Source of the DNA: Octopus sinensis
Taxonomy: Eukaryota
Direction of reading: 5' to 3'
Length of the DNA: 64,000 nt
Assembly (NCBI RefSeq): GCF_006345805.1
Contig: NC_043017.1
Coordinates: forward strand, 7,502,001 to 7,566,000
Under the pieces are notes generated by a model. It had not been told where the DNA came from. It saw only the letters and a list, made by a program, of their open reading frames with translations, and made no database searches. Every line of letters begins with the position of its first letter. Position 1 is the stretch's first letter. This document shows, piece by piece, positions 17,616 through 38,197 of this stretch. Made by a program: the position numbers and the translations under genes.

Positions 17616-18413
17616 AAAGAAAAAAATTGGGAAAGTGGACATTAAAACAATAATAGAGGCTGCAGTGGTGATGATAGCTGCAATGATGAGGATGATGATC
17701 ATGAGGAGGAGGAGGAGGATAAGAAAACTGTAATCTAATCTAAAATATGTAGCTTTTTTACATTGTTGTATAATTTTCTTTTGAAAATTGGTGGTGGTGG
17801 TGGTGGTGGTGTACTCTGTAGCCTTGTACCACATGTTATACACACCCCTAATTTTAATCTTGATTTCAGCAGAAGTAAAAGTGTATGTTGTTCTTGGGGT
17901 GTATATGGTATGTAGTAATAATGATAATGTCCTAATACAATAATGAGTGTAGTGGGTGCTTTTTACGTGCCAGGGGAGGCTGGCAACGGCCACGATCGGT
18001 TGGTGCTTTTTACATGCCACCGGCACGGAAGCCAGTCGAGGCAGCGCTGGCATCGGCCATATATATATATATGTATATATTATATATATATATCTGCCCA
18101 GAATCACGCTGGTGGGGAGGAGGAGAAAAAACAGTAATTCTGTGAAGGAGAAGTAGTGAGAGTAATAGTCCTGACTGAGAGGAAGTGAGAGAAAGTAACA
18201 GCAATGAGAGAAAGGAAGGGGTGAAAAGTGCGTGTACAAGGAAAGTATATGAATGTTTGTATGTGTGATTATTATGTACTTTATTTATATATAAAATACT
18301 ACAATTAGCTGTCATTATTGACGGCACGTGGTCAGCGAGTAATAAAAATTAAACATAAAACCTTAACTATGCAGAATGTTATTAAAGTTTCTTTTCTCTT
18401 CTTTTCCTTATAG

Positions 18414-18533
18414 GTAAGTCCTTGTTTTCAAATCAACCACCAGCCGTCCTTATTTACAAATCAACCACTAACCGCCTTTGAAAAATTTTATTGGAAACTA
18501 TTTCCGTCTTTCATTGAAAGCCGTTCGAGTGAG
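18414..18533 (+). other. Candidate non-coding exon or RS-exon whose acceptor is immediately followed by a donor (recursive splice site)
   Basis: 22-nt pure pyrimidine tract, then atag|GTAAGT at 18413/18414, and a second donor GAG|GTAAGT at 18533/18534. Confidence 0.55.
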
Positions 18534-19210
18534 GTAAGTGTTGTTGTTATCATTGTTGTCGTGTGATCCCAGATCAGCTCAGTTTAAGGGACTCTCTAAT
18601 CATGATTGAGCCATCTTTTATTTAGACACAGTGTATTTGGGAATGCATTATTCAATGTGTCCTTAGTTCCCCACCTCCACCACCACCACCACCTTTTTTT
18701 TTTTGTACAACAATTTGTCCTGCTATCATACCTGATATAAAGCTACCTGTTTCAATACCACACGTCTCCTCAGGTGAGGCTTCTTGTCTTGCAAGTTATT
18801 TGGCGACCACACCTGTCACAGAATTCTATATATTGGTCAAGCACATGATGGACAACTTCTTACTTTCCCATTATAAAAGGCCATTCTCTTTCATGGCATG
18901 AGGGGAATGGAGTGAATGCTGTGGCCAGCGGAGCTGACTCAAAACCAAACAGCCTGGCCAACCCAGGTGATTATAAAAGGCAGAAGTGTGGTGGTCTTTG
19001 AGAGAATAAAGGTCTCTTCAGTCATGAATGACTATGGGATTGCACCTTGAAAGTTTTCCTCCAAAGCACAAGTCCAGGCAAAGATGGGATCTTTGTGGTT
19101 TTCTAACTGTTTACAATTTTGTTCCAGATGTTTTCAAGTTTGGTATATGGATTAAGTTTTGTATATTAATTATGAAATATGAAATTCATTTTTCCTATAA
19201 ATCCATAATC

Positions 19211-35720: not shown

Positions 35721-36675
35721 ATATGAATGCCCAAACATGTAATAACATATTGAGTGATAATAGTGGCTTTATAATAGTTTTTGACTGCTATTTCTAAACA
35801 TGTAAGGGTTTTTGCAACCCTCTCCATTATAATTGTTAGTTATTCATAATTATCAACACTCTTCTATTATATATATTATATGTACAAAACTTTTCTCCGT
35901 GTATTTGAAATTCTGTATCTGGTCCTTATCTCACAAAATAACCAAGAAGAGAAATAAAAAGTATTTTACATTTGAGATGAAAAAAAAACCTTATGAAATC
36001 TTTTAAATGCTGATTTATTCAGAGAATTCTATTTTTAACTGAACGTTTCAATGTCATAATAAATATTCATCCTACCTCAACTGTTTTATTATTTTATGGC
36101 TTAATAGATTTCAGATGGTGTATCAATATCTTTAGTACTTAACACCCTGATCCGTGTTGTGTATATGTTTTAAATTCATTAGAAACACTGACCCACGCAA
36201 GCCAAACATGTACAGCTATCTAGACTGACAAAATGTCCTCTCCTTCAATCTCATGTATATTTGATGTGGTGAATGTTACAGTGAAAGGCATTTGCGATTG
36301 TTCTAGATTGTTCTGGTCCTACAGCAGCAAGCAAGCAATCAATCAAGCTGCTAACACAAGGAATTACCAGCTATCTATTATGGATAAGTATTTGAAAGCT
36401 AAAGTGTGTTACCTCTGCAATTGACCTGCCACACCGGTTAAGTTCTTATTCCTGAAACATTAGTTTGTCTTGTACGTTTGGCTTTGTAATAAATGCTTGT
36501 GTGGGAGGAGAGAATGTGATGGAGGGAAGAAGGTCTGTTGGTGTACATATTATATGTGGTTGATGTATGTTAGCGCTGGTGTGAATGTTGATCTGTAGTT
36601 TTGTCATTGACAATGCGATTATTGCTTACACATTGTCAACAGCAATTTACATCTTGGTTTTATTCATTGTTTCAG

Positions 36676-36729
36676 ATGACAATGATGATGATGATGATGA
36701 CTGGAGCTGCGGATAAGGAGGCAAGCTAA
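36676..36729 (+). promoter_or_regulatory. Upstream ORF MTMMMMMMTGAADKEAS* in the Kir 5' UTR
   Basis: ATG ACA (ATG)6 ACT...AGC TAA. It is out of frame with the main ORF and ends 55 nt before the main ATG. Confidence 0.55.
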
Positions 36730-36784
36730 ACGCAAATCACTGGCTTATTGTCATCTGTGTCAGAGCCTATCTTTTTGAAGACTC

Positions 36785-38197
36785 ATGCAGGCTATGGTCA
36801 TGGAGACTGGGTATAGTCCAATACCAGGACATGGCTTGTCTCCACAAGTCGAACCGGACATCCTGACTTCTTCTGGGAAACTCGATCGGCGCACTTCAGA
36901 AGACTCATTTGCAGAGTATGCATCGCGAAACCAACAGCGTCAGCCTAACGGACCTATCGTCCATCGGAGAGCCGAACGGCACTTTTCAAAGAAACTGAGG
37001 CGACGCCTGATTTATAAAAATGGTGAAGTAAACATTACTCAGACAAACATACGCAAAAGACGGCGGCGGTATCTTGCGGATATCTTCACAACCCTTGTTG
37101 ACATTAAGTGGCGTTATAATTTAATGATTTTTGCCATGGCGTTTATTTGTAGTTGGTTGATATTTGCCTTAATTTGGTGGTTGATTTGTTTTTCACACGG
37201 GGATTTGGATCATCTTGATGACAAGAACTGGAAGCGCTGTGTTGTAGAAATACGCTCATTTACATCTGCTTTACTATTTTCCATTGAAACACAGCACACA
37301 ATTGGTTACGGATCAAGACACACAACAGAGGAATGTCCCGAAGCAGTTGTAGTCATGATGATCCAATCGTGTTTTGGTGTTATTTGCCAGGCCCTTATGA
37401 CTGGTATTGTGTTTGCTAAACTTTCTCGTCCAAAAAAGCGAGCTGAAACGTTAATGTTCAGTAAAAACGCTTGCATTTGCAAGCAAGATGGAGATATGTG
37501 TTTATTGTTTAGAGTAGGAGACATGCGTAAGTCTCATATTGTTGAAGCTCATGTACGCGGTGTTTTAATTAGACGAAAGACCACAAAAGAGGGAGAAATT
37601 CTCCCTCTTTTTCAATTTGATGTTAATCTTGGTTATGAAGATGGTCGTGATAGATTATTTCTAGTGTGGCCTGTGATTATAGTTCACAAAATTGAAGACG
37701 ATAGTCCATTTTGGGAAATATCTGCTGAAGATCTTCATCGAGAACAGTTTGAATTTGTAGTCATTTTAGAAGGTATCGTAGAATCGACAGGTATGACAAC
37801 TCAAGCGAGGAGCTCTTATTTACCCGGAGAAATCCTGTGGGGTCATCGATTCGAACGCCTTATCACTTTCCAAAAAGAAAATGGACAATATCAAATAGAT
37901 TTTTCTCGTTTTCATAACACCGTTAAAGTTGAAACGCCGCTTTGCAGTGCAAAAGAACTTGCAGAGTTGGATAATGCAATGCAGGAAACAGCCTCAATTG
38001 ATGAGGATGAAAATACCTCTCTGCTGTCAAAAGCTGAAAAATACCCAAGCCCTTATATTGTTAAAAGGCATGGCGCCGTTCAGACAGACTTTCCTGACGA
38101 TGACCAGGAGTCTTTTTCTAATCGAGATTCCATACGTAGTAGACAAAACTTATCTTCAGATAATGATGGCAAAGAAGAATCAGAGACTCTACTTTGA
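36785..38197 (+). CDS. KCNJ: Inward-rectifier potassium channel (Kir2/GIRK/Irk-like), 470 aa, single coding exon
   Basis: Pore signature SIETQHTIGYG (TIGYG = residues 172-176), conserved extracellular Cys pair (KRCVV, EECPE), slide helix DIFTTLVDIKWR, TM1 and TM2, PIP2 motif RPKKR, and cytoplasmic motifs SHIVEAHVR, FLVWP, VILEGIVE, SSYL, WGHRF. An in-frame TGA lies upstream at 36776-36778. The orthologue cannot be assigned without a phylogeny. Confidence 0.98.
   Translation: MQAMVMETGYSPIPGHGLSPQVEPDILTSSGKLDRRTSEDSFAEYASRNQQRQPNGPIVHRRAERHFSKKLRRRLIYKNGEVNITQTNIRKRRRRYLADIFTTLVDIKWRYNLMIFAMAFICSWLIFALIWWLICFSHGDLDHLDDKNWKRCVVEIRSFTSALLFSIETQHTIGYGSRHTTEECPEAVVVMMIQSCFGVICQALMTGIVFAKLSRPKKRAETLMFSKNACICKQDGDMCLLFRVGDMRKSHIVEAHVRGVLIRRKTTKEGEILPLFQFDVNLGYEDGRDRLFLVWPVIIVHKIEDDSPFWEISAEDLHREQFEFVVILEGIVESTGMTTQARSSYLPGEILWGHRFERLITFQKENGQYQIDFSRFHNTVKVETPLCSAKELAELDNAMQETASIDEDENTSLLSKAEKYPSPYIVKRHGAVQTDFPDDDQESFSNRDSIRSRQNLSSDNDGKEESETLL

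What the first reader, a model, noticed from the sequence alone, without database searches (positions are those of the whole stretch)
18388..18539. Textbook recursive splice site (YnAG|GTAAGT) with a 120-nt RS-exon
Seen: a 22-nt pure pyrimidine tract, then TAG immediately followed by a perfect donor GTAAGT (18414). A second perfect donor GAG|GTAAGT lies 120 nt downstream. The intervening sequence is unique, ATG-free and has an internal repeat (caaatcaaccac x2). Established: Drosophila ratchet points and vertebrate RS-exons in long introns of neuronal genes have exactly this structure. Inference: this lies in a long 5' intron of the Kir gene, about 18 kb upstream of the coding exon, and is removed stepwise or included as an alternative 5' UTR exon. 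I am not aware of recursive splicing being characterised in cephalopods. Alternatives are an ordinary exon that happens to begin with GTAAGT, or an exon ending at 18413.
Basis: partly seen in the sequence, partly recalled or inferred. Interest (0 to 1): 0.75.

Follow-up and report, generated by a model that had tools for sequence, protein, structure and literature searches.

The report
Conserved recursive-splice-type exon in octopus
In the long intron upstream of an octopus potassium-channel gene, a splice acceptor sits directly against a perfect splice donor, with a second donor 120 bases on. The same layout lies upstream of the same gene in the distant octopod Argonauta, so it is very probably a real recursive-splicing-type exon, although no RNA data could be examined.

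Summary
Y22 (18388-18409), A, TAG|GTAAGT (G at 18414) and a second GAG|GTAAGT (G at 18534) bound a unique, ATG-free 120-nt segment that holds a 28-nt tandem duplication. The window is Octopus sinensis CM016879.1:7,502,001-7,566,000.

The site lies 18,262 nt upstream of a conserved acceptor (36675|36676) of the single coding exon of a GIRK-like Kir gene. Expected chance count per window is about 0.004-0.03 for the acceptor|donor motif and about 1e-3 with the second donor.

Argonauta hians has the same architecture 9.6 kb upstream of its orthologous coding exon: Y-tract-CAG|GTAAGT, a 93-nt body, then G|GTAAGT. This motif occurs nowhere else in 311 kb (both strands) of cephalopod genomic DNA held. 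The exon body and flanks are no more alike than shuffles, and four-fold-site identity is 0.615. Identity at all 15 motif bases therefore points to selection on both splice motifs, as in fly ratchet points with cryptic RS-exons.

No octopus transcript could be retrieved, so use of the sites is inferred, as is the balance between exon skipping and inclusion. Verdict: a new member of a known kind (RS-exon) in a phylum where the held literature describes none.

The parts
18364..18370 (+). Candidate branch-point region TAACTAT (TTAAC fits yUnAy, branch A about 18366, 47 nt from the AG)
   Evidence: Inference only. The 7-mer is one of the few conserved blocks upstream of the tract in the Octopus/Argonauta alignment, but Argonauta has several alternative yUnAy candidates.
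18388..18409 (+). 22-nt uninterrupted polypyrimidine tract of the 3' splice site
   Evidence: 19/20 pyrimidines in the scoring window. Argonauta has 16/20 at the equivalent place.
18411..18413 (+). 3' splice site TAG (AG at 18412-18413)
   Evidence: Argonauta has CAG at L017 272-274.
18414..18419 (+). GTAAGT: core of the 5' splice site that would be regenerated once an upstream exon is joined to 18414 (ratchet-point donor)
   Evidence: The first 7 nt, GTAAGTC, are identical in Argonauta.
18414..18533 (+). 120-nt RS-exon (non-coding, ATG-free; frame 1 is stop-free but has no protein homologue)
   Evidence: The Argonauta counterpart is 93 nt, L017 275-367.
18418..18473 (+). 28-nt tandem duplication inside the RS-exon; accounts for 120 nt against 93 nt in Argonauta
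18531..18539 (+). Downstream RS-exon donor GAG|GTAAGT (G of GT at 18534)
   Evidence: Argonauta has GTG|GTAAGT at L017 365-373.
36655..36675 (+). 3' splice site of the Kir coding exon (ttggttttattcattgtttcag|)
   Evidence: It is homologous to the acceptor used in spliced decapodiform-like transcripts, and is conserved in Argonauta and O. bimaculoides.
36676..38205 (+). Kir coding exon: 5'UTR part 36676-36784 with an (ATG)n upstream ORF 36676-36729, then CDS 36785-38197 (470 aa, IRK + IRK_C; sources name it GIRK3-like)
38206..38211 (+). Donor GTGAGT of a 3'UTR intron, 8 nt after the stop codon
   Evidence: The same donor is spliced in L010-L012 and retained in L003-L009.

Best explanation
This is an RS-exon, that is, a recursive splice site plus its defining downstream donor, in the long 5'UTR intron of a GIRK-like inward-rectifier K+ channel gene. 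It is conserved among octopods. The proposed mechanism has three steps, all inferred. (1) The 120-nt unit is recognised by exon definition, with U2AF/U2 on the Y22 tract and AG at 18412-13 and U1 on the donor at 18534. (2) An upstream, not yet located, 5' exon is spliced to 18414. This removes the upstream intron segment and regenerates a donor NNN|GTAAGT at the new junction. (3) One of two donors is then paired with the coding-exon acceptor at 36675|36676, which is 18.3 kb downstream. If the regenerated donor is used, the 120 nt are removed and leave no trace in the mRNA. If the donor at 18534 is used, the 120 nt enter the 5'UTR. The two donor cores are identical, so the outcome should depend on the last three bases of whichever upstream exon is joined, and possibly on exon-junction-complex repression. 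I therefore expect alternative use rather than a strict zero-length ratchet. What is shown: the motif architecture, its non-random nature, the conserved downstream acceptor, and conservation of both splice motifs in Argonauta against a neutrally drifted body.
For: The architecture is read directly from the sequence.

Chance expectation is about 0.002-0.02 per window for the acceptor|donor pair, and about 25-fold less with the second donor.

Gene context: the Kir CDS is at 36785-38197. The coding exon has a conserved acceptor at 36675|36676. Spliced transcripts of relatives join alternative 5'UTR exons to the homologous acceptor, and no upstream exon lies within 10 kb in L016, a genomic contig from a related decapodiform-like species (about 94% identical to those transcripts). 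O. bimaculoides has four RefSeq protein accessions with one identical protein, which I take (inference) to be four mRNA isoforms differing in UTRs.

Conservation: A. hians L017 has ttttatcattttctgtctttcccacAG|GTAAGTC at 273, then a 93-nt body, then G|GTAAGT at 368, lying 9,608 nt upstream of its coding exon. That is about half the Octopus distance, in line with a genome about half the size (PMC12682272). About 1e-3 such sites are expected in that 10 kb, or about 4e-5 with the second donor. These are the only two Y-rich AG|GTRAGT sites in 311 kb (both strands) of cephalopod genomic DNA held.

The exon body and flanks are not more similar than shuffles (p about 0.17, 0.7 and 0.5). Four-fold-site identity is 0.615, so identity at all 15 motif bases has p of about 7e-4 under neutrality.

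This pattern, conserved SA|SD with a poorly conserved body and a conserved downstream donor, is what is described for fly ratchet points and RS-exons (PMC8605326; PMC6224609).
Against: There is no RNA evidence of any kind. The exact Kir protein occurs only in the two genome assemblies, and no octopus transcript contig was found.

The upstream exon and promoter were not located, so 'inside an intron' is shown only on the downstream side.

Orthology of the two sites rests on position, strand and architecture, because body similarity is not significant on its own.

Only two octopod lineages could be compared. O. vulgaris and O. bimaculoides loci reach only 10 kb upstream of the CDS and are too close to be informative.

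The downstream donor is as strong as the ratchet donor. In flies cryptic zero-length sites usually have the stronger donor at the ratchet point, so this may be mainly an included exon.

Decapodiform-like 5'UTRs show no exon starting with GTAAGT.
Confidence: 0.6

Rival explanations
1. It is an ordinary 5'UTR cassette exon, alternative or constitutive, at 18414-18533. Its first six bases happen to read GTAAGT. That sequence is never used as a donor, or is permanently repressed after splicing, as with the exon-junction-complex-repressed 'annotated RS-exons' of mammals.
For: The strong acceptor and strong downstream donor are 120 nt apart, and both are conserved in Argonauta. The downstream donor is as strong as any regenerated one. 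In humans 3.6% of annotated exons regenerate a usable 5' splice site, and 93.8% of those are constitutive (PMC6224609). Relatives of this gene do have alternative multi-exon 5'UTRs.
Against: The body of the exon has drifted to neutral levels, yet GTAAGTC at its very start is identical in both species. An unused hexamer would be kept with p of about 0.05 (0.615^6). A perfect GTAAGT is expected after only about 2e-4 to 5e-4 of acceptors.
Confidence: 0.2
2. An exon ends at 18413. GTAAGT at 18414 is the ordinary donor of an upstream, possibly first, exon, and GTAAGT at 18534 is a tandem alternative donor 120 nt further on. The pyrimidine tract is then exon sequence and not a 3' splice site. A variant is a dual-specificity AG|GT site used as acceptor in some transcripts and as donor in others.
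For: Promoter-like elements lie just upstream: TATATAAAA at 18288-18296, a CRE half-site TGACG at 18319-23 and an E-box CACGTG at 18325-30. A start near 18320-18330 would give an exon of about 90 nt ending at 18413. Two consensus donors are conserved.
Against: The TATA-like, CRE and E-box motifs are absent from the 270 nt upstream of the Argonauta site, where there is a palindromic repeat element instead. TA-rich runs are ubiquitous in this window. The textbook 3' splice region, a long Y tract followed by YAG, is conserved in Argonauta (16/20 Y plus CAG), and this model leaves that unexplained.
Confidence: 0.1
3. There is no splicing role. The motifs are chance juxtapositions in low-complexity, pyrimidine-rich intron DNA, or they are conserved U1-binding sites that only protect the long intron from premature cleavage and polyadenylation.
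For: Genome-wide, hundreds of chance Yn-AG|GTAAGT sites are expected in a genome of about 3 Gb (extrapolated). AGGTAAGT as an 8-mer is not enriched in the window. Body similarity between the species is not significant.
Against: Joint chance of the full architecture is about 1e-3 in the window and about 4e-5 in the Argonauta upstream 10 kb. It occurs on the gene's strand at proportionate distances in both species, and nowhere else in 311 kb. U1 protection would not require an abutting 3' splice site.
Confidence: 0.05

Closest known systems
Drosophila intronic ratchet points with cryptic RS-exons (Ubx, kuz, Bx; Hatton 1998, Burnette 2005, Duff 2015, Joseph 2018/2021)
   Same: It shares the juxtaposed (Y)n-AG|GTAAGT and the position in a long intron. 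It also has a short downstream exon closed by a second donor, and highly conserved SA|SD with a poorly conserved body (PMC8605326).
   Different: The RS-exon is 93-120 nt, against about 50 nt in flies. The downstream donor is a full consensus site rather than weaker than the ratchet donor. The site is in a 5'UTR intron, so inclusion would not break a reading frame. No saw-tooth coverage or splicing intermediate has been observed. The phylum is different (Mollusca).
Vertebrate RS-exons in long neuronal genes (Sibley 2015), where inclusion depends on which upstream exon is joined
   Same: It is an exon-definition unit that begins with a regenerated 5' splice site and is closed by a competing donor. 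It lies in a neuronal-type ion-channel gene with a long first intron and alternative 5' exons in relatives.
   Different: The intron segments known here (at least 18 kb) are far shorter than the >150 kb introns first described, as I recall. A poison-exon or NMD read-out is unlikely because the exon is upstream of the start codon.
Annotated, exon-junction-complex-repressed RS-exons of mammals (Blazquez 2018, PMC6224609)
   Same: It is an exon that regenerates a strong 5' splice site at its upstream junction and has a strong donor of its own.
   Different: Inclusion in mRNA is not shown here. That work found no lophotrochozoan data and no exon-junction-complex effect in Drosophila.
Dual-specificity splice sites (AG|GURAG used alternatively as 3' or 5' site; recalled from memory, Zhang et al. 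2007)
   Same: The AG|GTAAGT sequence could serve either role.
   Different: That class does not require a long Y tract together with a conserved second donor about 100 nt downstream, both of which are present here.

Membership tests
Recursive splice site / RS-exon | Tandem 3' splice acceptor and 5' splice donor: (Y)n-NAG|GTRAGT | tested here: met
   The site reads Y22-A-TAG|GTAAGT at 18388-18419. It is the only site in the window with at least 14/20 Y before AG|GTRAGT.
Recursive splice site / RS-exon | Downstream 5' splice site that closes a short RS-exon (exon definition) | tested here: met
   GAG|GTAAGT is at 18531-18539, 120 nt after the ratchet point. In Argonauta GTG|GTAAGT lies 93 nt after it.
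Recursive splice site / RS-exon | Lies inside a long intron of an expressed gene, with an exon of the same gene upstream | tested here: inconclusive
   Downstream side: 18,262 nt separate the site from a conserved acceptor of the Kir coding exon, to which 5'UTR exons are spliced in relatives. Upstream side: the exon and promoter were not located, and no octopus transcript was available.
Recursive splice site / RS-exon | Evolutionary conservation of the SA|SD motif (and of the downstream donor) against a poorly conserved exon body | tested here: met
   O. sinensis and A. hians are identical at all 15 motif bases. The body and flanks are at shuffle level. Neutral identity is 0.615, giving p of about 7e-4. 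Only two lineages were compared.
Recursive splice site / RS-exon | RNA evidence: upstream-exon-to-RS junction reads, saw-tooth intronic coverage, lariats with 5' end at the RS site | not testable with these tools
   There is no read-level data. Logan and NCBI look-ups returned only genomic contigs for octopods.
Cryptic ('zero-nucleotide') ratchet point subclass | Regenerated donor stronger than the RS-exon donor, so that the exon is skipped | tested here: inconclusive
   Bases +1 to +6 are identical (GTAAGT) at both donors. With an approximate position weight matrix recalled from memory, the downstream donor scores 11.7 bits (Octopus) and 9.7 bits (Argonauta). The regenerated donor would score 6-12.7 bits depending on the unknown last three bases of the upstream exon.
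Expressed / annotated RS-exon subclass | Exon present in mature mRNA isoforms | not testable with these tools
   No octopus mRNA sequence could be retrieved. The four identical-protein accessions in O. bimaculoides (which I take to be four isoforms) show only that UTR variants probably exist.
Protein-coding cassette exon | Translated sequence with homologues or a conserved peptide | tested here: not met
   Frame 1 is open, but it gives no hit in the 5.8-billion word index or in the 1.84-billion representative HMMER scan. The Argonauta peptide is unrelated beyond the first residues. The next exon has an in-frame TAA upstream of the start codon.
Interspersed repeat / transposon fragment or known RNA family | Further copies, or an Rfam or tRNA match | tested here: not met
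   There is no second copy in the window or loci. No Rfam hit lies at the site and no tRNA-like sequence was found. Only 64 kb plus the fetched loci could be searched, not the whole genome.

The most novel reading that the evidence does not exclude
Recursive splicing operates in cephalopods and has been maintained since the Octopus-Argonauta split. This RS-exon would work as a donor-competition switch in the 5'UTR of a GIRK-type channel gene, so that the identity of the upstream exon, and hence of the alternative promoter, decides whether 120 nt are added to the leader. It would be the first documented recursive splice site in Lophotrochozoa. It would also suggest that the mechanism dates back to the bilaterian ancestor, or arises whenever introns grow long.
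Probability: 0.5. Interest if true: 0.55.

Novelty: new member of a known kind. Interest (0 to 1): 0.45.

Why it matters
Recursive splicing has been shown experimentally in flies and vertebrates. The searched literature contains nothing on it for cephalopods or any mollusc. Cephalopods have very large, intron-rich neuronal genes, so they are a natural place to ask whether stepwise intron removal is a general solution to long introns.

This site gives a concrete, conserved and easily assayed candidate, with one junction, one lariat and two competing donors, in a gene relevant to neuronal excitability. Public octopus brain RNA-seq could settle it in an afternoon.

If confirmed, the Octopus/Argonauta pair would also show the fly-like signature in a third lineage: conserved splice motifs with a neutral body. 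The result would be confirmatory rather than paradigm-changing.

Tried and rejected
1. Octopus transcripts. An exact look-up of the 470-aa Kir protein found only the O. sinensis and O. vulgaris genome assemblies. Other members of its 90% cluster are genomic octopod contigs (L013-L015, L017) or transcripts of much more distant cephalopods (L003-L012, L018-L029; CDS about 83% identical). An N-terminal protein search returned no cephalopod fragment and did not even return the protein's own cluster. The full-length search added only one partial decapodiform-like protein.

2. Reaching the site in O. vulgaris or O. bimaculoides. Loci are limited to 10 kb of flank and the site is 18.4 kb upstream. 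Ten small ORFs around the site are not in the protein collection, so no short genomic contigs could be pulled. These species would in any case be uninformative, with four-fold-site identity of 1.0 and 0.964.

3. Homology of decapodiform 5'UTR or 3'UTR exons to the window. Sensitive blastn and nhmmer found nothing credible.

4. Coding-exon idea. The 40-aa frame-1 peptide has no homologue, so this was rejected.

5. Repeat or ncRNA idea. Self-BLAST, Rfam and ARAGORN were all negative, so this was rejected within the sequence available.

6. Proving orthology of the Octopus and Argonauta exons by body similarity. The similarity is not significant, so orthology is argued from architecture, strand, gene and proportional distance instead.

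7. A splice acceptor 5 nt before the ATG (GAAG|ACTC) was suggested by BLAST end-points. It was rejected once L016 showed that the region is collinear in relatives and that the real conserved acceptor is at 36675|36676.

Full report
**Source and gene context**

The window is identical to Octopus sinensis GCA_006345805.1, CM016879.1. Window 26785-48197 equals record 7,528,785-7,550,197, so window position p is 7,502,000 + p. O. vulgaris is about 97.7% identical over the shared 21 kb.

The only convincing gene in the window is a single-exon CDS at 36785-38197 (+). It encodes a 470-aa inward-rectifier K+ channel with IRK and IRK_C domains. Sources name its O. bimaculoides and Argonauta orthologues 'G protein-activated inward rectifier potassium channel 3(-like)'.

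**Observation**

Reading the sequence confirms each element:
- A pure pyrimidine run lies at 18388-18409 (22 nt).
- It is followed by A (18410), TAG (18411-13) and GTAAGT (18414-19).
- GAG|GTAAGT has its G at 18534, so the bounded segment 18414-18533 is exactly 120 nt.
- The segment contains no ATG.
- The stretch 18300-18660 has no second copy in the window or in any locus fetched.
- It has no Rfam or tRNA-like match.

The one correction is that a single A separates the tract from the TAG.

**Is it more than chance?**

The 8-mer AGGTAAGT alone is not enriched (4 found, 2.57 expected). Acceptor-like sites are rare, however. On both strands there are 7 with at least 19/20 pyrimidines before NAG and 42 with at least 17/20. 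GTAAGT occurs at about 2.3e-4 per position.

That gives roughly 0.002-0.02 expected juxtapositions per 64-kb window. A second GTAAGT within 40-200 nt contributes a further factor of about 0.04. The arrangement is therefore unlikely for a given window. A genome of about 3 Gb would nevertheless hold hundreds of chance acceptor|donor pairs, so the sequence alone could not settle function.

**Is it in a 5' intron of the Kir gene?**

Contigs encoding close relatives of the protein include spliced transcripts from more distant cephalopods. Their CDS is about 83% identical, and I infer they are decapodiform-like.

In these transcripts different 5'UTR exons are joined to one acceptor...TTTTTTTTTCAG|ATGATAATGG. 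A cassette of about 65 nt is optional, and a 3'UTR intron begins just after the stop codon. The related genomic contig L016 has no upstream exon within 10 kb.

The window has the homologous acceptor, ttcattgtttcag|ATGACAATGATG, at 36675|36676. It is identical in O. bimaculoides and conserved in Argonauta. The coding exon is therefore preceded by an intron. The candidate site lies 18,262 nt upstream of its acceptor.

That transcription of this gene begins upstream of 18388 is inferred and not shown. O. bimaculoides carries four RefSeq protein accessions for one identical protein.

**Conservation, the key result**

The Argonauta hians locus L017 reaches 10 kb upstream of the orthologous CDS. Its only AGGTAAGT reads ttttatcattttctgtctttcccacAG|GTAAGTCactat... 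at L017 273. A second G|GTAAGT follows at 368, so the bounded segment is 93 nt.

- The Octopus segment is 120 nt, which is 92 nt plus the 28-nt duplication.
- The Argonauta site lies 9,608 nt upstream of the Argonauta coding-exon acceptor. That is about half the Octopus distance, and the A. hians genome is about half the size of Octopus genomes (PMC12682272).
- In that 10 kb only five acceptor-like sites reach 16/20 pyrimidines. The expected number of AG|GTAAGT sites is about 1e-3, or about 4e-5 with the second donor.
- Across 311 kb (both strands) of cephalopod genomic sequence in hand, these two sites are the only pyrimidine-rich AG|GTRAGT junctions.

The rest of the region has drifted.
- Local alignment of the exon bodies scores within the shuffle distribution: p of about 0.17 for the exon bodies, 0.7 for the upstream flank and 0.5 for the downstream flank.
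- The body does not find its counterpart when searched against the whole locus.
- Global identity of the bodies is about 60-64%. This matches the four-fold-site identity of the two Kir coding sequences, 0.615.

Under that neutral rate, identity at all 15 bases of AG|GTAAGT plus G|GTAAGT has a probability of about 7e-4. Conditional on orthology, both splice motifs have been under purifying selection and the sequence between them has not.

Orthology itself rests on the same gene, the same strand, a proportionate distance and the same architecture. It does not rest on alignable sequence, and this is the main weakness of the argument.

**Interpretation**

The literature describes fly ratchet points as tandem SA|SD pairs in long introns. 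They have highly conserved splice motifs, a short and poorly conserved cryptic exon, and a downstream donor that is needed for exon definition (PMC8605326; PMC6224609). The octopod element matches this description point for point at the sequence level.

It differs in two ways. The body is longer (93-120 nt). The downstream donor is itself a consensus site. With an approximate position weight matrix recalled from memory, it scores 11.7 bits in Octopus and 9.7 bits in Argonauta. The regenerated donor would score 6-12.7 bits depending on the unknown last three bases of the upstream exon.

Under the donor-competition model this predicts alternative outcomes rather than obligatory zero-length removal. 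The 120 nt may be a 5'UTR exon that is included after some upstream exons and spliced out after others.

Frame 1 of the exon is stop-free in both species, and both lengths are multiples of three. However, the peptide has no homologue and is not conserved. The next exon has an in-frame TAA before the start codon. I therefore treat the exon as non-coding.

**Rivals**

- An ordinary 5'UTR exon whose initial GTAAGT is unused. This is plausible a priori, since 3.6% of human exons regenerate a usable donor and most of those are constitutive. It does not explain why the first seven bases alone are conserved in a neutrally evolving exon.
- An exon ending at 18413, with tandem donors at 18414 and 18534. 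This is suggested by TATATAAAA (18288-96), TGACG (18319-23) and CACGTG (18325-30) just upstream. None of these is present in Argonauta, whereas the textbook 3' splice region is.
- Pure chance, or a U1-only role. The joint probabilities and the conserved abutting acceptor make these unlikely.

**What could not be done**

- No octopus RNA evidence was obtainable.
- Only two octopod lineages could be compared at the site.
- The upstream exon is unknown.
- The genome-wide frequency of such sites could not be measured.

**Novelty and score**

The held literature has no paper linking recursive splicing with octopus, and only incidental co-mentions for cephalopods, squid or molluscs. If RNA data confirm it, this would be the first recursive splice site described in a lophotrochozoan.

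It is a new member of a known kind. It is credible and cheap to test, but not surprising given how long cephalopod introns are. I score interest at 0.45 and put confidence at 0.6 that it functions as an RS-exon with a used regenerated donor. I put about 0.85 on it being a genuine exon or splice unit of some kind.

Noticed in passing
window 18418-18473: A 28-nt tandem duplication (86% identical) lies inside the candidate exon. Removing one copy gives 92 nt against 93 nt in Argonauta, so the duplication probably arose in the Octopus lineage.
   Followed up: partly
window 18414-18533; L017 275-367: Frame 1 is free of stop codons in both species, and both lengths (120, 93) are multiples of three. 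Yet there is no protein homologue and no peptide conservation. The low G content of the segment (17/120) may explain the open frame.
   Followed up: partly
window 36676-36729; L017 9883 onward: The Kir coding exon opens with an (ATG)n microsatellite that forms a short upstream ORF, ATGACAATGATGATG...AGCTAA. The ATG run and the AGCTAA end are conserved in Argonauta, and the start is recognisable in decapodiform-like transcripts. It may act in translational control.
   Followed up: no
window 38204-38211; L003-L012: A donor AAAG|GTGAGT lies 8 nt after the stop codon. In distant cephalopod transcripts the same donor is either spliced to an exon about 9.5 kb downstream (L010-L012) or retained (L003-L009). 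This indicates a conserved, alternatively removed 3'UTR intron.
   Followed up: partly
window 18286-18330: TATA-like TATATAAAA, a CRE half-site TGACG and an E-box CACGTG lie 85-125 nt upstream of the site. They are not present at the Argonauta site. This may be a coincidence in TA-rich DNA or an Octopus-specific internal promoter.
   Followed up: partly
window 18772-18779: A second, weaker acceptor|donor juxtaposition, ...gtctcctcAG|GTGAGG with 14/20 pyrimidines, lies 358 nt downstream of the first.
   Followed up: no
L017 1-128: A near-perfect palindrome (tttcagggtcaatagcccc...ggggctattgaccctgaaa) resembling a miniature inverted-repeat element lies about 150 nt upstream of the Argonauta site.
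   Followed up: no
window, whole length: On the + strand (the Kir gene's strand) AG|GTRAGT occurs 9 times, against 3 on the - strand. The window is otherwise dominated by TA, CA and CCA microsatellites that create many spurious long ORFs.
   Followed up: no
L016 (ENA ERZ21867824 ctg81939l): A contig filed under an ENA metagenome assembly carries a cephalopod Kir gene. It is 94% identical to the Logan transcripts, so it is host DNA within a metagenome.
   Followed up: no
tool behaviour: The word-indexed protein search with the N-terminal 162 aa did not return the protein's own 90% cluster, whereas the full-length query did. Negative results from that index for short queries, including the 40-aa exon peptide, should be read with caution. 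The independent HMMER scan was also negative.
   Followed up: partly
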